Below, one piece after another: positions 45,801-62,088 of a stretch of 64,000 bases of DNA. The first letter of the stretch is position 1, and each line of letters opens with the position of its first letter. The notes under the pieces are model-generated. The model did no database searches and was not told the DNA's origin. It saw nothing but the letters and a program-made list of their open reading frames with translations. Source of the DNA: Auanema rhodensis (taxonomy: Eukaryota > Animalia > Nematoda). The DNA is taken from NCBI GenBank assembly GCA_964057225.1, contig OZ059894.1, forward strand, positions 6,758,001 to 6,822,000, in the 5' to 3' direction. Position numbers and translations under genes: made by a program.

Positions 45801-48800
45801 TGTATGTATGTGCATATGACGATTTCGCGGACTGTTCTTCATCATGTAGGAACAAAGAATTCTGACTAACATTTCATTTTGAATTATTTTATTCACAAAG
45901 AAGGAAGTCTCGTAACTTTCTTGAAGAAAAGCTACACAAAATGTTTTATATCGCATTACTTTGATGTTTTTGTGTTTGTCTCATGCTCTACCAATGAGTA
46001 TAGAAACCGCAATTCCGTCCTGTTATCGGACTAATCTGTTTCTATTCTTCAATTTGTAGTATAAAAAACTTTTTTCTTCGTTTTTCTGTGATATTGTGCC
46101 TTATAAGTAAATGTAATGTTTGTTGTATTAATTTTTCTTGTTTCAAACTAAGTTGTTGTAATTGAGGTGAATTATAGGTTATATGAATCCTCTATGTTAG
46201 CATGTTATTTCTTTTCTAGATGTACCATTGAACAAGCATTTTTATTGAAATTTACTTTTTTTTTGTTCTTCGTGTACGTCACCACAATTTCCTATGAATG
46301 TGAAATCTCATGGCACTTTTCTACATAACACTTTTCTTCTTTTTTTCCTTTTTCTCCAAAATAGTACAGCACACAAGCTTTGTTTTTATTGTTGCAATTA
46401 GTGCTAACTGAGACTGAGAAACTTGGAATACACGGCAGAATTCAAAGCACCGCTGATTGACGCTTCACAGAATTCATTAATTTCGGAGCATTCCAGCTTA
46501 AACGTATGCTATGACAGCTCTCGCATCTTCATCTTTTACTTCAATTTCAATTATTCATTAATTAAAATAATTTTGTGGTAATAAAACTTCACGATTGCCT
46601 CATTGTCTGGTCTGCGTATAGTATCGTGGCTTGTCTTTAGGCCACATTAATTGACATGCTCACAGACTCTATTGCTCAATCTTTGAAACTGATTGAATCA
46701 TCTGTTTCCCACTTTGATGCATTTTTTGGTCGTTGATTGTAGTCAACCATAATTCATCTGGCGATGGTAGTTCGGAGGACAACAAGTGGTCGTTGTCGCA
46801 TCAACCGCCGGGCGCATGGTCGCGCGCGGTTTGCACAATGCCCTCCGGCAATTGAAGGTTTGTGGTGCAGACGAGAGACGAAGAGAAGGAGGTTATGGTT
46901 GTGGAGAAGGGGAAGCAAAGCAAACCCATTTCGTGGGAGGAAAATGAAAAAAACATAAATATATACTTACCGACGCACATATGCTTCAATATAGCCAATA
47001 ATCTCGGTCTACGTACCTATTTTACTAAGCTGTTCAGGTGTTCCGTTCACCCATTCCCCCTTCTGTTTTGCGATTTATTTCTTTTTGCCTTTCCCTCTTC
47101 CTTTCTCTTTCTCTCTTCAGTTCCCACATTTTCCTATCTATTTCCTCTAGCTAGTTAATGCACATCGATTGATAGCTATACCACTGCATAACCAACATAA
47201 GCTTTGGGCCAAATAAACGAATTGAATTGAACACGGCTGGATGGAGTCCATGTAGCCTCTGAACGTTCGAATAGCATTTCCTTTTTTGGTTGATCGGTAT
47301 ACGTATAGCGCATTTCCTACTTAACTCTCTTCAAGCCTTTTCCATTATCTGTTTTGTGTTGGCTTTAGCTACTTCTATTTTTTCCAATTTATACGATTTC
47401 ATTAAGTTTTTTTTTAACTTTTTTTGCGATGCATGAATATATTATCAAACTTAGCTGTTGAGTTAACTTTCATCGGCAGATTGTCTTTGGATTGAATTGT
47501 TGAATGTGAAAATGAGAAAATTGTCTACATATCGAAGCATTCCCGTACGAATTGTTTCTTTCTTTCTTTTTCAAATAAGAAACCATTAAGTCCTTGAGCA
47601 TTGTACTATTCCTTTTCTCGGGCTGCTGGAGGCTCTGCATTGTAAATCGTGGCAGACCCTAAAGCATGAGAAGGAAAGCGGAAAGAGAGGAACATACTCG
47701 TTTTTCAGATATCGGCTCTTCTCCTCTCTTTTCCTTCTCTTTTCTCCGTTCAATTTGTCAACTACTCGTGATGGCCGGATGTGGCAAGTGCAGCCAGAAG
47801 CTAAGCAACTGCGCGAAAAAGACGAAATATGGTTTAAAAATCTTTCTTATAAAAGAAGCCGTGAATAAGAAAATGAGAAAAAAAATAGTTTTTTGAGTAG
47901 TAATAGTATAGTAGAACAAGGTGCTGAATGAAAAAAAAATAAATATGAAATATCTGAACGAGAGATAGGATTGGAAAAAATAGAGCAAAGAGAGGATATA
48001 AAAAGATGGAATGGTAATGAATAGTTAACTTTAGAGATATATGGCTAGCAGAAAAAGTGAGAGAGAAAGAGAGTATGATAAGGAGAGAAAGCGAATATAG
48101 GATTAAATAATAAATTTAAAATACTTACCTTAATCAACCGTTCATTTCATTTTAACAAACGAAAATAGTTGCACTAAACGAAATGTTGTTTACGTGAAAA
48201 TTTCACGTAACATGTTAATATCCCAATTTTGTGGAGAAATTGAACAACTGGGAACAGATATTTGCATGAATTTATTCTTTCAATTTGTTATTTTCGGAGC
48301 AACAAAAGTTTTTAAGTTGACTGTGAACGATATTTCTGCATCATTTCCTGGTAGTATTATCACTTATGGGAAAAAAATTCTCTGCAATGCATCCGTCATA
48401 CTCAAGATATACCATTTAAAATGGGTTTGGTTAGTCTTGCTGCTCATAATTCCAAATTTCATCTTCACAAAATCCAAACATCGTGTCACCTGAAAATAAT
48501 AACATGTATCTCTTTCATGCAGAGCTTTCCTCTATCGTATACATACCCACTAGATCGATTGATGAAGCCTGAGGGCTCTGTGTGGGGCTGTTGTAGCTAT
48601 AACTGCGCAGTTCCTCCTCAGCTGCTTTTCTTCAACTCCTCCCGAGTCCTAGGGGTCCTGCCACGAAGTAATCTCGCGCGGGCTCTTGTTGTAATGTGGT
48701 GTTGGTGCTGGTGGATAGAAGAGCCGAGTAAGCTTTCTGTTTCCCTAGTCTTCAACTTCTTCTGCTCTACTCCTCATCTATCTGTTTCTCTTCCTTCGTT

Positions 48801-48990
48801 CTTCATTCGTTTCCTTGCAAATCACAGAGCACTCTCTCGCTAGTCCAACTGCTATTTCAGCATTCTCAGCTGATAGTCGAACATTTCGACCTTATTTGAG
48901 CCATATTCTTTCATTAACCTCCTTTAATTCATGACTAAGCATAAACGTTGAATGTTATTCAATCTAAGTAAGATTCATAAAATCTAGATT

Positions 48991-50784
48991 ATGGAGCAGT
49001 TTATCAAAGGTAAATTTTCATTATAATATATTGGACTATAACTTAGAAGCTGTCATTTAACCTATAGTCACACATCGGGCTTTGAATCTCATATCCTGGA
49101 TACGCTTTAAGCATCATCAGAGATTGCTTATCAATAGCAGTGCATATATAGCTCCCAGCATTTCCGAACTAGATCCCCTCTTCCTCCAGTCCCAATATTC
49201 TGTTGAGCAAAGTAGCTTGCATGATACCTCTGATATAATTTCGGCTCTCTGTGACTCTGATCAAAGGCTTTTCAAAAGCAATCTCTTTGTGGCTTATCAG
49301 TCTCAATTATAATTTCTCGTTTAGTTCATACTATGTTTATTTCTATACTTAAGCATTAGTCCAAATGAACACAAATTCGTCGAGAGATATCAATCCTCAT
49401 GGTCACAGCTGACGCGTTTTTATTAGCTAACGAAATACACCAGTAAATTTCTCATTTTGAGAGAACGTTTGGTTGCGTTCGTTTCGGACATTGCAGCCAG
49501 TTCAAACTATTTCACATTCCAATTGTTTTTTTTTGTTTGGAAAATGACCTGTACATCGCTATACTACCCCTAACTTAAGTAATCAACACAGCTAGTATTG
49601 TGTGTTGCTCCTAATTTCTCTCAGAAAAATTTATCGAAGTAATAATAGCCATCATAAGAAGCTGATGAGATTTATCCTTGCTCAAATTTCAATTTAATCT
49701 TAGTTATCTTCATTAGAAGTTTTTTAACAATGCGTCTACAGCCCGTTAGTATAATCTCTTATTACTTATATACTTATCTCTAACTATAATATCTTTAATT
49801 AGTTTTGTATTAAATTATTTTAGAGTGGAATTGGAGAACTCCTATGGCCACTCAGAAGACTGGGTCTCGACGATCTAGGAAACGTCGAAATAGTGAGACA
49901 AGTAGCGATGGTGCACCACCTATTCGAGTTCTTAGGGTAAGAAAATCGAACACTAATAAGAACTTATGTTTTTTATCAAACTTTTTTTTATTGTTGCCAA
50001 TGAGTTTTAAGACTAAAAATTGTTTTTTTTTCTTTTATCTTCAACATTCAAACAATTTTTGATTTTTTATGTTTCCAGCAAAAATAACAACAATACTATC
50101 ATAAATGGAGAGAAAATATAGTTTGAATTTTATTTGAATATTAACTGTTCTTTTATTTTTTAGTCGTATGGTGTGGATGAAAAATTGGAAATAATTGATT
50201 TCGCTAAAAACAATGGTAATCGTGCAGCTGGACGAGAGTATAATGTTGCTGAAAGTTCTATCAGAGAATGGAGAAAAAATGAGGACCGTTTAAGGTAACT
50301 GGAGAAATTTCTTAGAGCTTCATCATATTTTTCATTTATTTCAAGGCAACAAGTACAACAGTCTGCACCTCAATCAACACAAAAAACCATTACAGCTTTA
50401 CGTGATATTCCAAAAGTAAGGCAATTTCATTATTTCAAAAAAGTTATTTCTTCTTCTTACTTTTTTTCCCAATTATTTTCATGTTTTTTCTTGTTATAGT
50501 GTGAAGTAGGGCAGGTACCTCTATCACTATCAATTTCCCCCGTTCGCCGAGAATCTCCTTCTGCTGATAATCAGGAAAATGAGGTAGTACACGATGTTAC
50601 AACTCTTACATGAAACTAAGGATTTCAGGCTTCGCTGGGCGCAGCCTCTAGCCATTCCAATCATTCAGGTTCTCCAACCATTTCGCTTTCTGGAAATGAT
50701 TCAAATCAGATTCCAATTTATGGGTCAGGGCGACGAAAAGCAAGACAACCGAGAAAAATTATCTGCGTCGAGCAGGAAAGCTAG
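48991..50784 (+). CDS. Brinker/pogo-type helix-turn-helix DNA-binding protein (~190 aa), no transposase catalytic domain, 6 exons
   Basis: Exons 48991-49009 (less certain; alternative start 49844), 49824-49936, 50164-50294, 50346-50415, 50500-50583, 50629-50784. Domain RSYGVDEKLEIIDFAKNNGNRAAGREYNVAESSIREWRKNEDRL fits the BrkDBD pattern (RSY...KL.I...A....N..AAR.F.V....VR.WRK); basic NLS-like RRSRKRR. Confidence 0.85.
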
Positions 50785-51535
50785 TCCATCACATCTAGTG
50801 TCATCTTCTCTCATCGCTTTACTGTCATTTAACTAGTTGACTACTGATTTGTCAAGTTGCTTTAGAACGCGTATTCCTTTTTAAATATTTTACTTAGTAC
50901 TTTCCATGACCGATGTCATTTAATTTCTTCCCAAAAATTGCAAATTAAAGTATGTTTGTACAGCTAGTCATAAGCGTTAAGACAACTTTGAATGCAGCCA
51001 TTTCAGTTATTTAAACTCCAAATAGCAAACATTCTCAATCTATCTTAGCCGGTGTTAATATTGCCTCGGTTCTCACATTTCTGGTCCACAAACTCATATT
51101 ATTCCTCATTCACCTATAATTGTTATTTCGAAATATCTGCTTATCCTTGATAATGCTTTGTTGGCATCTAATATTTTTAGTTTCACCTTGCTCCATTCTC
51201 TTTCAAGAAAATCATTTCTGTATTCCGTTTCCCTTTGCTTTAATTATTTCATCTCTTAATACGATATGTCATCTCATGACTGCGTAATTGCCGTTTTCTT
51301 AAAGTGTACTTATCGAATTTAGAGCCTTTGTGATCTCCGTCGGTGCCTATATTGCCTTCTTTATCAGAAGTCTTTTCTTAGATGTGATGGACCCACTAAG
51401 TTCTATATATATAAGCGTTTGTGAAGGATTCTGGAAGTACATATACATGCTGTCTTCTAATGTCCAATAGTTTTATTTCTTTTATTAAAACATTTTTCTC
51501 AAATTGTTTTCATTCTATGCAAATCACAAAACTTA

Positions 51536-51607
51536 TGGAGGTGTGGGGAATCGAACCCCAGACCTCTCGCATGCGAAGCGAGCGCTCTACCCCTGAGCTA
51601 CACCCCC
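51536..51607 (-). tRNA. tRNA-Ala (anticodon CGC)
   Basis: Reverse complement GGGGGTGTAGCTCAGGGGTAGAGCGCTCGCTTCGCATGCGAGAGGTCTGGGGTTCGATTCCCCACACCTCCA: 72-nt cloverleaf, A/B boxes, anticodon stem CTCGC/GCGAG around TT-CGC-AT, G3:U70 Ala identity pair, TTTT downstream. Confidence 0.97.
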
Positions 51608-51907: not shown

Positions 51908-54900
51908 TTACTGAGGTGGAGCAGGTGCTGCTGGAGCGGCAGCATCAGCAGCTGGAGCAACGGCATTCTAAAAAAAGGATTGCTTATACCACATCTATGA
52001 GAAAAGTTGAAAAAAAAAGAATCGAGCACTCACGGGATCTTGAAGATCCTGGCTTGCTCCAGGAATTATTTTTCCAATAGCTTGCTGAGCCTGGGAAGCA
52101 TATCCTTTAGTGGCATCAGCTGAAATTGTAAAATTAGGAAGGAAGAGTTACGAATCCCTTACCAGCAGTAGACAAAACGTCCTTAGTCTTATCAAAAATG
52201 GAGCTCAAAGCTTGTTTCTGAAATCGGGAAATTTATTGAATTTCTTTTCTTTTTTTTAGTTGTTGTTTTCAAAGCAATGTTTCTTCGCTTTCTTTTGAAA
52301 AAAACTACTGAGTGAAGCGGGGGGGAGGAAGCTCGTTTCGTAGTTCCAGATTTCCTGTGTTGTTGTATCTTTTCATGCATACTAGAAAACAACTTTTTTC
52401 ATGTTTGCTTCTATTCACAACATATTATGGCAAAAAATAGGTTTTTTGTAGATCATAAAATCTCCCGAAGGACATACGCATGGCTGAACTATTTGAATCT
52501 TCTTGGAAACGTATGCTCCAGTTCCAGATTAAAACACGTTTATACTGTTTTCGTTCGTTAGTAAACGTTAGTCATCTTTTGACGCTTATTAAAGACAATC
52601 TACATGACCTCAGAGCAACATGCCATTATGTGTAATTTCCGGACTAAAAAGGAAAGAGCACACAAATTCTCATTTTGAATGGAAATGTTGCGTACTCGCA
52701 CTTCATTTCCAACAATTATCGACCATCGCGTTACGCCCCTTTGACCACAATTCAGCAAAGGAATGGAAAGAGTTTAGAGTGAAAGACCAAGAAATGTTTA
52801 AATGTGAATGGCCAGAGAAAAAGTGCTATAAAATGAGAAAATAGTGTGAATGTAAAGAAGAAGCCCTGAAGGAGAAATAGCAAACGTTGTGTCTGCGGCA
52901 GAGAGATAGAGAACATGCCTTGAAGCCTCTACTTTATCATGGTCTTTGAGCACGAGTACCTGAGGCTTTGAGAATGAACATCAACGTTTGCTGCTGAATA
53001 CGCATGCGCCAGCTGAGAAAACGTTGACAATCTAAGGATTCATTGAAGAGCAGCAGTGTTAGGATGCCTTTTCGTATTGCCTCGTCATTTCTTCCGGGAA
53101 ATGGCATAAACTTCCGACACAACATTGACTACTGACTCGGCTATAGAAGAAAAGCTGAAGCAATTATATCGTCAAATGTTTAATGTCTTGAGAATAATCT
53201 CAATATTATGAAGGAAACTGCATGTTCGATGATTTGAGACTCTTCGTCAGAAGTTTGTATTATGAAGATTTACTATAAGTTTTCTCCTTCGTAAGAAAAC
53301 TTCTAAAAAGGAACCACCTGCCAGCTTTCTAGACTATAACATTTTTTCAGTCAAGATTTTGTGGTCGGGCTGTTAGCAATCTTATGGCGAGACTCGTAAA
53401 GAAAGGATTTGGCAATTTAAATCTCCTTTCTTTTCAACAAAAACTTAACACCAGGCTATGCAGTATGAATGAAACTATAAAATGTCTTATTGTTTTAAAA
53501 GTAGCATTTTGCTTAAATAAATATATTTTATAACAATAAACAGTTCTTGTACTCTTGGAAACTTTGGCTGTATTTATATTTTTGCTTTCTCTTTTTCTTT
53601 CACAAGAAAATGTGAAAACAATAACAAGTTTTAAGTTTTATATAAAGGCATCTGGTTGTATGAGTTTGAATAATCCTGCTTCAAACTTCATGATTCACGC
53701 TTGTCAGCTCAACGGTGAGCTCAGTAATGAACATCCTCCCTTCTGCTCAAGTATTTCCTGATGCTTCGTTGAGCCATAATGGTGACACCAGCCTCAACTA
53801 TCGTGAGTATATATAAGGTCTGCATGTGGTTTATTTCTATTTCAAAGATGAAAGATGAACGAGAAATAGGCAAAGCTCATGTTCAGCTGGTTATACTAGT
53901 AGGTTAGTCTTATTTCTTCTTTTTCTTTCTTTTTCGAGCTCGGCTTCTTTGGCCTTTTTGAGATGTCTAGCTGATCGATAGCTCTTCAGGGGTGCTAGTG
54001 GGTCCGAAGAAGAAAGCTCCTTGCGGCAAATAGACACAGAAACAGATAGAAAGAAAGAGAAGAATGAAAAGAGAAATTGTATAGAAAGACAGAATATAGA
54101 GAACGCAAAAGAGCGAGACGAGAGGTCCCCGAAACAGAATGCCATAAGACGACTACGTCCTTGGTTCTACGAAGACAACATGCACATTCACGGGAGCGCT
54201 TTTTCTGCTTTTCCTAACCACCTTCATGTTGTGTATCTGTGGTTTAATGTCACATTTTCATGAGAATAAATATGCAAGAATAGGATATTCGGTTTAAAGA
54301 GCAAGTCAAAAGGCATCAGAGGAAATACTAACCTAGAACCCCTATAGATCGATGATTACAATTTGTAAGCAAAAAGATAGATGGGTGCTTGACAAAACGA
54401 GACTGAAATGAGATGAAAGATGTCAGCTGAATTTGGCTAAGACTAATGAGGGGATTAGCATTCAGATAAGACGGACTGAGAATTTGGGTGCAGAGTTGTG
54501 CCGAAAAGTAACGAAGATGTGAATGATGGTGACGATAAGGTATAAGCTATCATATTCACTATTTCCGCTTCTTAATTTTAATTCATCATTTGACCTAGCT
54601 GCCAATTTCTATTGATATACAACTTTCAATTTAACAAGTTTTCATTTTTGGTGGATATTCAGCATTCAAACTAAGCAAACACATGCATAGTTCGGCTATA
54701 TTGTGCTCATCATCACATTTCTGACAGCCAAACGCAGCTAGAACTCGGACTTTTTTATGAAAAAAAAACAGAATAGGCGGCTGAATCTGACACTTGTTGA
54801 ACTTAGACGGAAAACTTGTTATTGCTTGCTGTCTTGTCTCGTGGGCCTTAATCCAGCTTTCTCTTAGCCCAAACATTGAATTACAGATTTTTCTTTTTGT

Positions 54901-55418
54901 ATTAAAAAGATATCGAGCACTCGTTGATTGCTTACTATATCAATGAAAGAATAACATGCAACGGTCCTAAATTGTCGTTTTCTCTGAGTCTAATTACTGC
55001 TTAATCTTCACTTACTTCTTTTGATCTTATTTCTTAGACAGTATATGCATGTTAGTACATGCAAGTTGAGCACGTCAAGAACATATACATGTATGTCTAG
55101 ATAGTAAGCTCGACTATTATTCATAACTGCTTCTTACTAACTTTATCGATTTTCGCCATAATTTTAACTATTTGCATCTAATTAATACATGTTCAATAAA
55201 CTTGAGACTCAAGCTATAAATCTTTCATTCAACATTGTTGCCTTTTTTCATAGAAAAATATATTATATTCATCTTAAAAAACGCCAAAAAAAAGTTTTTC
55301 TGCTTCACTCATTAAATAATTACAAAGAAACAAAAACCTTTTTTCAAATATAATTTTTAGGAAAAGATATTTTATATTAAAATTAAAAACTCACAGCAGC
55401 ATCAGCAGTTCCGGCCAT
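51908..55418 (-). CDS. 74-aa microprotein with 11-mer amphipathic repeats (LEA group 3 / synuclein-like) and Ala/Pro-rich tail, 4 exons
   Basis: Exons 55418-55395, 52217-52163, 52119-52034, 51967-51908 with consensus GT-AG sites and matching phases: MAGTADAAKQALSSIFDKTKDVLSTAADATKGYASQAQQAIGKIIPGASQDLQDPNAVAPAADAAAPAAPAPPQ*. Exons 2-4 are strong; linkage of exon 1 across 3.2 kb is inferred. Confidence 0.8.

Positions 55419-57432: not shown

Positions 57433-62088
<4,656 letters not shown>

What the first reader, a model, noticed from the sequence alone, without database searches (positions are those of the whole stretch)
48991..50784. Brinker-like candidate repressor with putative NuRD (RBBP4) and CtBP docking motifs
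Seen: an intron-containing ~190-aa protein with one Brinker/pogo-type HTH, no DDE domain, PLSLS (50518-50532) and a C-terminal GRRKARQPRKI (50728-50760). Known: FOG1/SALL/BCL11 recruit NuRD via RRKQxxP (FOG1 SRRKQSNPRQI), normally at the N-terminus; CtBP binds PxDLS-type motifs; Drosophila Brinker is a BMP-pathway repressor with this DNA-binding domain and a CtBP motif; nematodes are generally described as lacking Brinker. Inference: a pogo-domesticated or Brinker-related repressor with an unusual C-terminal NuRD hook.
Basis: partly seen in the sequence, partly recalled or inferred. Interest (0 to 1): 0.8.

Follow-up and report, generated by a model that had tools for sequence, protein, structure and literature searches.

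The report
Nematode pogo-derived repressor with NuRD hook
This is a real, expressed, single-copy nematode gene (ortholog of the uncharacterised C. elegans Y44A6D.3) that joins a transposase-derived DNA-binding helix-turn-helix to a short tail motif, kept in every relative examined, that matches the published internal docking motif for the RBBP4 subunit of the NuRD repressor complex.

Summary
Spliced contigs from four runs reproduce all five introns. The ORF has 190 codons. Exon 3 passes Pfam BrkDBD, and PLSLS and GRRKARQPRKI lie at the stated coordinates.

The gene is single-copy in its 181-Mb genome, has no DDE domain or TIRs, and is under strong purifying selection (pN/pS 0.04-0.06 against Auanema sp. 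JU1783).

It belongs to a Rhabditida-wide family whose C. elegans member is the uncharacterised Y44A6D.3. It is not a Brinker ortholog (Brinker DBD E=0.29). Clade III/IV members keep a second Tc5/CENP-B-type HTH, and the nearest outgroups are pogo transposases, so this is a domesticated pogo DNA-binding module.

The tail motif is the main result. In 49 aligned members the only invariant residues outside the HTH are R, K and P of RK-x3-P-x-[KR]. That is the published internal NuRD-interaction motif (ZNF512B/PHF6). It occurs in 49/49 members against 1% of shuffles.

A complex model with an RBBP4 surrogate scored 0.81 (best control 0.20) and placed exactly RRKARQPRKII in the pocket. A like complex has been solved, so this pass may be from memory.

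The CtBP motif is only partly conserved. No binding has been measured.

The parts
48642..49009 (+). Exon 1. It is a 5' UTR with three short upstream ORFs (ATGs at 48694, 48931, 48952), followed by the start codon at 48991 and 19 coding bases (MEQFIK + 1 nt).
   Evidence: Contigs of X1-X4 begin at 48642-48712 and splice out at 49009/49824. ATG 48991 is the first in-frame ATG after the in-frame TAG at 48985. The stretch ATGGAGCAGTTTATCA[A/G]AG|GTAA is conserved in Auanema sp. JU1783 while its flanks have diverged.
49824..49936 (+). Exon 2. It holds the second ATG at 49844, which aligns with the start of the strongylid orthologs, and a basic patch SRRSRKRR (49865-49888). I read that patch as a nuclear localisation signal followed by an acidic/serine stretch.
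   Evidence: Splice joints are and the translation. The RKRK patch is nearly invariant in the family consensus. pN/pS is 0.04 against Auanema.
50164..50294 (+). Exon 3: the psq/BrkDBD-type helix-turn-helix DNA-binding domain.
   Evidence: Pfam BrkDBD scores 26.7 bits (cut-off 23.4) and CENP-B_N 22.5 bits (cut-off 21.2). About 60 nematode representatives are 70-98% identical over these 44 aa. There are 24 invariant columns. The AF2 model has pLDDT 85-94 here. pN/pS is 0.06.
50346..50415 (+). Exon 4: a glutamine-rich, variable linker.
   Evidence: Splice joints are. The region is not conserved in alignment A1 and is predicted to be disordered.
50500..50583 (+). Exon 5: disordered tail containing VPLSLS (PLSLS at 50518-50532), a CtBP-type PxDLS-like match.
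   Evidence: Splice joints are. The motif matches the ELM CtBP pattern. The aligned column reads PLSLN in Auanema, PLSLR in Mesorhabditis, PLDLS in C. auriculariae, VSLST in strongylids, and is absent in the C. elegans group.
50629..50784 (+). Exon 6 coding part: a serine-rich tail (SSHSNHSGSP) and the C-terminal island GRRKARQPRKI (50728-50760). The core RKARQPRK (50734-50757) is an internal NuRD-interaction motif of the form RKxxxPxK. The stop codon is at 50782-50784.
   Evidence: Translation is. R, K and P are invariant, and the eighth position is K in 39 and R in 10 of 49 members. In the RBBP4 complex model the contacting residues are 35-45 of this exon, RRKARQPRKII. pN/pS is 0.06.
50785..51465 (+). 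3' UTR. Its end is approximate.
   Evidence: The contigs run to the edge of the laid stretch at 51400 and carry about 65 further bases.

Best explanation
The locus is a functional, single-copy, six-exon gene. It encodes a 190-aa nuclear protein of the Rhabditida-wide Y44A6D.3 family.

The protein is a domesticated pogo-transposase DNA-binding module. In this clade V lineage the module is reduced to one psq/BrkDBD-type HTH preceded by a basic NLS-like patch. It is followed by a disordered tail that carries short linear motifs.

The C-terminal island RRKARQPRK is an internal NuRD-interaction motif (RKxxxPxK/R). The proposed mechanism is that the HTH binds specific DNA sites and the tail motif inserts into the H3-tail/FOG pocket on top of the WD40 propeller of RBBP4 (LIN-53/RBA-1 in nematodes). 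That would bring the NuRD deacetylase/remodeller to those sites and repress transcription.

The mid-tail PLSLS may add CtBP as a second corepressor.

What is shown: transcription and splicing, the domain, single copy, family membership, purifying selection, motif invariance, and a passing complex model. What is inferred: DNA binding, RBBP4 binding in vivo, which RBBP4 complex is recruited, and repression.
For: - **Splicing and expression.** Four runs give identical spliced contigs.
- **Domain.** BrkDBD scores above its cut-off. In the AF2 model the HTH is confident and the tail is disordered, with a local confidence bump at the motif.
- **Not a transposon.** The gene is single-copy and has no TIRs.
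- **Orthologs.** They occur in Auanema, Mesorhabditis, Heterorhabditis, Diploscapter, Pristionchus, Strongylida, Caenorhabditis (C. elegans Y44A6D.3), Ascaridida, Spirurida/filariae, Oxyurida, Strongyloididae, Steinernema, Panagrolaimidae, Cephalobidae, Aphelenchoididae and Tylenchida.
- **Pogo origin.** Clade III/IV members carry PF03221 HTH_Tnp_Tc5. The nearest non-family hits have BrkDBD + Tc5 + DDE_1.
- **Synteny and selection.** Synteny with Auanema sp. JU1783 is kept. pN/pS is 0.04-0.06 at pS 0.37-0.68.
- **Motif invariance.** The invariant residues outside the HTH are exactly R, K and P of the motif, and the eighth position is always K or R. The regex hits 49/49 members against 1% of shuffles. 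It hits 75 of 81 members with a tail of 85 aa or more.
- **Match to experiment.** In ZNF512B the residues essential for RBBP4 binding are R422, K423, P427 and K429 (K or R). The first R and Q4 are dispensable or partial, and the following hydrophobic residue contributes (PMC11602157). These are the positions kept here.
- **Complex model.** RBBP4 surrogate plus the exon-6 peptide scored 0.81, 0.81 and 0.70, with a best control of 0.20. That mark was reached by 51 of 78 solved complexes and 2 of 108 mismatched pairs. The runs agree in at least 49% of contacts and the partner's pLDDT is at least 42. The interface is partner residues 35-45.
- **Surrogate validity.** All 24 interface residues of the surrogate are identical in this genome's own lin-53 exons.
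Against: - No biochemical or genetic data exist for any family member. Y44A6D.3 appears in one searchable paper, only as a line in a table of transcription factors.
- Y44A6D.3 was not found in the held supplementary files of three C. elegans chromatin-complex papers: PMC8131101, PMC6072134 and PMC6826145. This is weak negative evidence.
- The complex model may pass from memory, because RBBP4-NIM complexes are solved (2XU7, 8TX8 and others). The tool's calibration is untested on peptides and disordered chains, and the partner's pLDDT is low.
- The RBBP4 chain was an invertebrate surrogate from a metatranscriptome, not the nematode protein.
- A basic island could instead serve nuclear import.
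- Q at motif position 4 of the N-terminal RRKQ type is absent.
Confidence: 0.6

Rival explanations
1. The conserved C-terminal basic island is mainly a nuclear localisation signal (importin-alpha ligand) or an accessory DNA/minor-groove contact. Under this reading the protein is a plain DNA-binding factor whose cofactors are unknown.
For: The island is lysine/arginine-rich, like a monopartite NLS. It lies in a disordered tail. In the ZNF512B study importin KPNA4 also co-purified with the protein (PMC11602157). No experimental link between this family and NuRD was found.
Against: An NLS does not need an invariant proline exactly four residues after RK, followed by an invariant K/R two residues later and then a hydrophobic residue. 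That pattern is the iNIM consensus. A separate, nearly invariant RKRK patch already sits N-terminal to the HTH. There is no GRP core as in AT-hooks. The complex model places these residues in the RBBP4 pocket with controls at 0.20 or below. The two functions are not mutually exclusive.
Confidence: 0.25
2. The protein also, or instead, recruits CtBP through the mid-tail PLSLS. It would then act as a Brinker-style short-range repressor.
For: PLSLS fits the ELM CtBP pattern P[LVIPME][DENS][LM][VASTRG]. In total 19 of 49 family members have such a match, against 7% of shuffles. At the aligned position C. auriculariae has canonical PLDLS and Mesorhabditis has PLSLR. Acrobeloides has PLDLA, and Panagrolaimidae have PLDL[ST] followed by basic residues about 20 aa after the RRK motif. 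From my own knowledge, Drosophila Hairy uses PLSLV.
Against: The motif is not positionally conserved across the family. The closest relative, Auanema JU1783, has PLSLN, which fails the pattern. Strongylids have VSLST with no proline. Members of the C. elegans group lack it.
Confidence: 0.25
3. It is the nematode ortholog of Drosophila Brinker and acts as a BMP-pathway default repressor.
For: The Pfam BrkDBD model is the best-scoring family for exon 3, and databases name the family 'Brinker DNA-binding domain-containing'.
Against: Direct comparison with the solved Brinker DBD (2GLO) gives only E=0.29 over 27 residues, and Dan/CG11849 scores better. CENP-B_N also passes its cut-off. Long family members carry the pogo-type second HTH that Brinker lacks. 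The nearest outgroups are pogo transposases at 59-66% identity over the HTH. There is no evidence on BMP signalling.
Confidence: 0.03
4. It is a decaying pogo transposon remnant or a chance ORF with no host function.
For: The HTH type is typical of pogo transposases.
Against: The gene is single-copy in 181 Mb. It has no TIRs and no DDE domain. It is spliced and expressed. It is syntenic with Auanema. pN/pS is 0.04-0.06. Orthologs occur across Rhabditida.
Confidence: 0.01

Closest known systems
ZNF512B / PHF6 internal NuRD-interaction motif (iNIM, RK(x)xxPxK/R; Wunderlich et al., NAR 2024, PMC11602157; PDB 8TX8, 4R7A)
   Same: The motif has the same consensus and spacing (RK-x3-P-x-K/R plus a hydrophobic residue) and is also not at the N-terminus. 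The residues that are invariant in this family are the ones shown to be essential in ZNF512B. The complex model places the peptide in an RBBP4 pocket. From my own memory of the solved complexes it is the same pocket.
   Different: The carrier is a pogo-derived HTH protein of 150-630 aa in nematodes, not a vertebrate zinc-finger or PHD protein. The motif lies 12-95 residues from the C-terminus. Binding has not been measured.
FOG1 / SALL1,4 / BCL11A,B / ZNF827 N-terminal NIM (MSRRKQxxPxxI)
   Same: It has the RRK...P core, a basic residue two places after the proline, and then a hydrophobic residue. The presumed function is the same: a DNA-binding factor recruiting NuRD through RBBP4.
   Different: The motif is not N-terminal. 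Position 4 is not Q (it is A, P, N, C, T or G in the family). The DNA-binding domain is of a different type.
Domesticated pogo transposase genes (CENP-B, JRK/JRKL, TIGD1-7, POGK, POGZ; Gao et al., Mob DNA 2020, PMC7386202)
   Same: The DNA-binding region is of pogo type: a psq/BrkDBD/CENP-B_N HTH, plus a Tc5/CENP-B-type second HTH in clade III/IV members. It is a single-copy host gene under purifying selection.
   Different: The whole DDE catalytic domain has been lost, and in clade V the second HTH as well. The family has gained, or retained, a corepressor-docking tail. It is restricted to nematodes in the named records.
Drosophila Brinker
   Same: It has a single psq-type HTH matched by the same Pfam model, an otherwise disordered protein, and short corepressor motifs in the tail (Brinker has a CtBP motif; this protein has a PxDLS-like match).
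   Different: There is no specific sequence relationship (E=0.29 to 2GLO). No Groucho motif was noted, though I ran no pattern scan for one. Instead it has an RBBP4-type motif that, as far as I know, Brinker lacks. Its ancestry, shown by the long-form relatives, is a two-HTH pogo module.
C. elegans Y44A6D.3 (NP_001256953/4; UniProt Q9XXE0, F3Y5Q0)
   Same: It is the ortholog. It has the same HTH signature GNRAAGREFNVAESSIREWRKNE, the same serine-rich tract, and the same island GSGRRKPRCPMKIV.
   Different: It is 229-230 aa with a longer Q/N-rich middle. It has no PLSLS-type match and no MEQFIKEWNW N-terminal extension.

Membership tests
Nematode Y44A6D.3 family (BrkDBD-containing small nuclear proteins) | HTH signature GNRAAGR-x-[FY]-x-VAESSIR-x-W[RK]K, with 70% or more identity over the 44-aa domain | tested here: met
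   Exon 3 is 98% identical to Auanema P0006 and 71-91% identical to about 60 nematode representatives. The signature regex finds 114 members.
Nematode Y44A6D.3 family (BrkDBD-containing small nuclear proteins) | A single C-terminal island [RK]RK-x3-P-x-[KR]-[IVML], preceded by a serine-rich tract | tested here: met
   The window has SSHSNHSGSP...GSGRRKARQPRKI. The island occurs in 49/49 aligned members and in 75/81 members with long tails.
Nematode Y44A6D.3 family (BrkDBD-containing small nuclear proteins) | Single-copy orthologous locus | tested here: met
   There is one hit in the own genome. Synteny with Auanema sp. JU1783 is kept: a 74-aa gene and a DHX8-like helicase lie downstream (window ORFs).
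Internal NIM (RBBP4/NuRD-interaction motif) carriers | Sequence RK(x)xxPxK/R in an accessible or disordered region | tested here: met
   RKARQPRK is encoded at 50734-50757. The tail has pLDDT below 50. The consensus is taken from PMC11602157.
Internal NIM (RBBP4/NuRD-interaction motif) carriers | Direct binding to the top-face pocket of RBBP4/7 | tested here: inconclusive
   The test was in silico only. The score was 0.81 against a best control of 0.20, the interface was exactly the motif, and the pocket residues are identical in the own-genome lin-53. The pass may reflect memory of solved complexes.
Internal NIM (RBBP4/NuRD-interaction motif) carriers | Co-purification with NuRD subunits and motif-dependent repression | not testable with these tools
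   This needs IP-MS and reporter assays. Y44A6D.3 was absent from the held supplements of three C. elegans papers.
Drosophila Brinker orthologs | Specific similarity of the DBD to Brinker beyond the generic psq/pogo HTH | tested here: not met
   The match to 2GLO is E=0.29 over 27 aa, and Dan (2ELH) scores better at E=0.028. Pogo transposase HTHs are 59-66% identical.
Drosophila Brinker orthologs | Single-HTH architecture without a Tc5-type second HTH in the family's ancestry | tested here: not met
   Clade III/IV orthologs carry PF03221, scoring up to 49 bits.
Drosophila Brinker orthologs | Role as a BMP/Dpp-target default repressor | not testable with these tools
   No functional data were found.
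Domesticated pogo transposase derivatives | Pogo-type N-terminal DNA-binding module (BrkDBD/CENP-B_N plus HTH_Tnp_Tc5) | tested here: met
   The window protein has the first HTH. Its orthologs in clades III/IV have both. Remnants of the linker RxRLxGGGRK persist in Mesorhabditis and Heterorhabditis.
Domesticated pogo transposase derivatives | Immobile single-copy host gene under purifying selection, with no TIRs | tested here: met
Active pogo/Tc5 transposon | DDE_1 catalytic domain, terminal inverted repeats and multiple copies | tested here: not met
   No DDE domain is encoded. No convincing TIRs were found. There is one copy.
CtBP-binding PxDLS proteins | A P-x-[DENS]-[LM]-[VASTRG] motif that is conserved in orthologs | tested here: inconclusive
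   The window's PLSLS matches the pattern. The aligned position reads PLDLS in C. auriculariae and PLSLR in Mesorhabditis, but PLSLN in Auanema and VSLST in strongylids, and it is absent in the C. elegans group. Panagrolaimids have PLDL[ST] elsewhere in the tail.

The most novel reading that the evidence does not exclude
The family is an ancient (pre-Rhabditida) capture of a pogo transposase DNA-binding module that was fused to corepressor-docking motifs. It still recognises pogo/Tc5-like terminal repeats or their genomic relics. It would thus act as a host-encoded, transposase-derived silencer that brings NuRD (through LIN-53) and, in some lineages, CtBP to transposon-derived sites. If so, iNIM-type NuRD recruitment would be shown to be used outside vertebrate zinc-finger proteins.
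Probability: 0.12. Interest if true: 0.8.

Novelty: new member of a known kind. Interest (0 to 1): 0.6.

Why it matters
The NuRD recruiters cited in the paper read here (PMC11602157) are vertebrate zinc-finger or PHD proteins. The motif-based ones use either an N-terminal RRKQxxP or the recently defined internal RKxxxPxK/R.

This finding adds a nematode-wide, uncharacterised DNA-binding protein family in which that internal motif is the only tail feature kept invariant across the family. The carrier is a domesticated transposase HTH, not a zinc finger.

Because C. elegans has an ortholog (Y44A6D.3), the hypothesis can be tested directly with standard genetics and biochemistry. It could identify a new sequence-specific entry point for LIN-53/NuRD in worm development. 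It is also a clean example of transposase domestication in which the protein is progressively reduced: the DDE domain is lost first, then the second HTH.

Tried and rejected
- **Joined protein.** The exons were searched by reference. The near-identical Auanema ortholog P0006 served as the full-length proxy for alignment and folding.
- **Length filter.** The search for homologous proteins could not be used on the short exons because of its length filter. The exon-3 peptide therefore went to the exhaustive representative search.
- **Own-genome RBBP4.** This genome's lin-53 is split into many small exons, so a full chain could not be supplied without joining. I used instead an uninterrupted RBBP4 ORF from a metatranscriptome contig (L020:37-1305). 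It is about 90% identical to human RBBP4 but not identical to it, and I take it for an invertebrate. I then checked that the pocket residues are identical in the own-genome exons.
- **Transposon reading.** Rejected.
- **Brinker orthology.** Rejected.
- **ncRNA in intron 1.** Rfam found nothing in the conserved intron-1 element, and folding gave z-scores of about 0.
- **Literature.** Y44A6D.3 appears in only one TF table. The supplements of three C. elegans chromatin-complex papers do not mention it.
- **First look-up of P0006.** The look-up of encoding contigs failed for P0006 because only the longest isoform is indexed. P0151 worked.
Full report
**1. The observation**

The region 48991-50784 was read directly. 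Contigs from four public runs of one study lie on it as a spliced transcript of about 1.55-1.6 kb with no mismatches.

- They skip 49010-49823, 49937-50163, 50295-50345, 50416-50499 and 50584-50628. All five are GT..AG introns.
- The runs are only guessed to be RNA. However, exact removal of five canonical introns is what an mRNA gives.
- The exon phases are consistent from ATG 48991: 573 nt, or 190 codons plus a stop.
- ATG 48991 follows an in-frame TAG and three short upstream ORFs.
- The mini-exon ATGGAGCAGTTTATCA[A/G]AG|GTAA is conserved in Auanema sp. JU1783 while its flanks are unalignable. I therefore accept the 190-aa model. ATG 49844 corresponds to the start used by strongylid orthologs (177 aa).
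- Exon 3 passes Pfam BrkDBD (26.7 bits against a cut-off of 23.4) and also CENP-B_N (22.5 against 21.2).

The Auanema ortholog P0006 was the full-length stand-in.

**2. Not a transposon**

- The exon-3 peptide and the BrkDBD model each hit only this one place in the 181-Mb assembly.
- There is no DDE domain, and the inverted-repeat scan gave only AT-rich chance pairs.
- Against Auanema sp. JU1783 (locus L085) the introns are mostly unalignable. Exons 2, 3 and 6 show pN/pS of 0.04-0.06 at pS 0.37-0.68.
- The downstream neighbours are the same in both species: a 74-aa gene and a DHX8-like helicase.

**3. What family it is**

An exhaustive search with the 44-aa HTH found about 60 single-HTH representatives at 70-98% identity. 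Every one that carries a name is a rhabditid nematode:

- Clade V: Auanema, Mesorhabditis, Heterorhabditis, Diploscapter, Pristionchus, many Strongylida, and Caenorhabditis, including C. elegans Y44A6D.3.
- Clade III: Ascaris, Parascaris, Toxocara, Anisakis, Syphacia, Gnathostoma, Thelazia, Loa, Brugia, Dirofilaria.
- Clade IV: Strongyloides, Parastrongyloides, Rhabditophanes, Steinernema, Panagrolaimus, Halicephalobus, Acrobeloides, Bursaphelenchus, Aphelenchoides, Meloidogyne, Heterodera, Globodera.

Databases label these proteins 'Brinker DNA-binding domain-containing' or 'HTH CENPB-type domain-containing'. I found no functional study. Y44A6D.3 occurs in one searchable paper, as a line in a transcription-factor table.

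**4. Brinker or pogo?**

- The solved Brinker DBD matches at only E=0.29, and Dan/CG11849 matches better.
- Clade III/IV members carry a second HTH of the Tc5/CENP-B type (PF03221, up to 49 bits).
- Mesorhabditis and Heterorhabditis still show the RxRLxGGGRK linker typical of pogo transposases.
- The next-best non-family hits, at 59-66% identity, are BrkDBD + Tc5 + DDE_1 proteins.

The family is therefore a domesticated pogo DNA-binding module. It has lost the DDE domain throughout and, in clade V including this window, the second HTH as well. It is not a Brinker ortholog.

**5. The C-terminal island**

In a 49-sequence alignment spanning the three clades, mean column identity is 12%. The invariant columns are 24 in the HTH region plus exactly three in the tail: R178, K179 and P183 in P0006 numbering.

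The columns around them read:

| Position | Residues |
|---|---|
| 1 | R in 43, K in 6 |
| 2 | R in 49 |
| 3 | K in 49 |
| 4-6 | variable |
| 7 | P in 49 |
| 8 | R, K, Q, M or I |
| 9 | K in 39, R in 10 |
| 10 | I, M, V or L mainly |
| 11 | V or I mainly |

The pattern RK...P.[KR] occurs once in every one of the 49 members, against 1% of shuffled sequences. It occurs in 75 of the 81 members that have at least 85 residues after the HTH. The six exceptions look like truncated or alternative gene models.

This is the published internal NuRD-interaction motif. Wunderlich et al. (NAR 2024, PMC11602157) solved ZNF512B's motif on RBBP4. By alanine scanning they found R422, K423, P427 and K429 to be essential, with K429R tolerated. 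The first R was dispensable, Q424 only partly needed, and F430 contributed. They proposed the consensus RK(x)xxPxK/R for internal motifs (ZNF512B, PHF6, ZEB2, IKZF1), as opposed to the N-terminal RRKQxxP of FOG1, SALL and BCL11. The positions evolution has frozen in the nematode family are the ones that study found essential.

**6. Structural plausibility**

AlphaFold2 on P0006 with the family alignment gives a confident HTH (pLDDT 85-94). The tail is disordered (below 50), with a local rise at the motif. That is the usual picture of a short linear motif.

This genome's own lin-53 is split into many small exons. For the complex test I therefore used an uninterrupted RBBP4 ORF from a metatranscriptome contig (L020:37-1305). 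It is about 90% identical to human RBBP4 but not identical to it. I take it for an invertebrate.

Results with the 51-aa exon-6 peptide as partner:

- The scores were 0.81, 0.81 and 0.70, and the best control scored 0.20. The mark was reached by 51 of 78 solved complexes and 2 of 108 mismatched pairs.
- The runs agree in at least 49% of contacts, and the partner's pLDDT is at least 42.
- The confidently placed partner residues are 35-45, that is RRKARQPRKII.
- The RBBP4 residues are 40-46, 72-76, 127, 129, 182, 276, 295, 320, 322, 339, 376-379 and 396-398. From my own knowledge of 2XU7 and 8TX8, this is the top-face H3/FOG pocket.
- All 24 of these residues are identical in the own-genome lin-53 exons.

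Caveats stated by the tool: similar complexes are solved, so the pass may be from memory, and peptides and disordered chains are outside its calibration. The result shows likeness to a known interface, not binding.

**7. The CtBP motif**

- PLSLS fits the ELM CtBP pattern. In total 19 of 49 members have some match, against 7% of shuffles.
- In a tail alignment of clade V forms the same column reads PLSLN (Auanema), PLSLR (Mesorhabditis), PLSQS (Heterorhabditis), PLQIS (Diploscapter), PTSLS (Pristionchus), VSLST (strongylids) and canonical PLDLS (C. auriculariae). The C. elegans group has nothing there.
- Acrobeloides has PLDLA. Panagrolaimids have canonical PLDL[ST] followed by basic residues about 20 residues after the RRK island.

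PxDLS-like motifs therefore recur in the family, but they drift in sequence and position. For this window's protein, CtBP docking is possible but weakly supported (about 0.25).

**8. Mechanism proposed**

- Shown: an expressed, constrained gene; a pogo-type HTH; a disordered tail; an invariant iNIM; a pocket-compatible model.
- Inferred: the basic patch SRRSRKRR imports the protein into the nucleus. The HTH, with its conserved R-x-L-K-x-Y arm, binds a specific DNA site. The iNIM docks onto LIN-53/RBA-1 and brings NuRD to repress nearby genes. CtBP may add to this in some lineages.

According to the discussion in PMC11602157, NIM binding is reported to exclude PRC2-bound RBBP4. Which RBBP4 complex is engaged in worms remains open.

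**9. Rivals**

- The island could be mainly an NLS or a DNA contact (0.25). The invariant proline spacing, the separate N-terminal basic patch and argue against this.
- CtBP recruitment as an additional function (0.25).
- Brinker orthology (0.03).
- Transposon remnant (0.01).

**10. Novelty and score**

The gene family is catalogued but uncharacterised. The motif type and the recruitment principle are known. What is new is the link between them: a nematode-wide, transposase-derived HTH family whose only invariant tail feature is an iNIM.

I found no paper that states this. I rate it a new member of a known kind, with interest 0.6. It is directly testable in C. elegans through Y44A6D.3.

Noticed in passing
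window 51536-51607 (- strand): A tRNA gene (Rfam RF00005, 68.5 bits, E=4e-14) lies about 70 bases beyond the apparent 3' end of the transcript. It accounts for part of the block conserved with Auanema at 51280-51607.
   Followed up: partly
window 49355-49420 (inside intron 1): About 65 bases are nearly identical to Auanema sp. JU1783 (the wider block 49334-49492 is 83% identical), while the rest of the 814-base intron is unalignable. Rfam gave no match and neither strand folds better than shuffles (z about 0). It does not encode the alternative N-terminus of the Auanema 220-aa isoform. It may be a cis-regulatory element.
   Followed up: partly
window 48541-48835 (promoter and 5' UTR of the gene): This stretch is 80% identical to Auanema over about 300 bases, which is more conserved than most introns. 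The 5' UTR exon carries three short upstream ORFs, with ATGs at 48694, 48931 and 48952.
   Followed up: no
window 51908-55418; L085:12803-16129 (-): The Auanema sp. JU1783 annotation calls a 74-aa product on the minus strand between the BrkDBD gene and the helicase. This is syntenic with the '74-aa microprotein' that another first-stage note (s1-421194) placed in this window.
   Followed up: no
window ~58276-59950 (+): This is a DHX8/PRP22 (mog-5-like) helicase gene. It has an RD/RS-rich N-terminus, an S1 domain ([15 protein letters not shown]) and a DEAH-box core ([13 protein letters not shown]). It is syntenic with the Auanema helicase gene.
   Followed up: no
G000:C3:18873887-18877141 (L003) and G000:C3:13583728-13586871 (L004): The genome has two loci that match the RBBP4 N-terminal histone-H4-binding domain (PF12265). 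One scores 99 bits and is lin-53-like. The other scores 30.5 bits and is possibly rba-1-like.
   Followed up: partly
Family members P0043, P0049, P0069, P0030, P0052, P0064, P0041 (clade IV long forms): These long forms have a further conserved mini-motif, [ILV]-[ST]-M-V (as in ..NGxSISMVRK..), between the second HTH and the serine-rich tract. It may be homologous to the V-[PS]-L-S-L patch of clade V short forms. Its function is unknown.
   Followed up: partly
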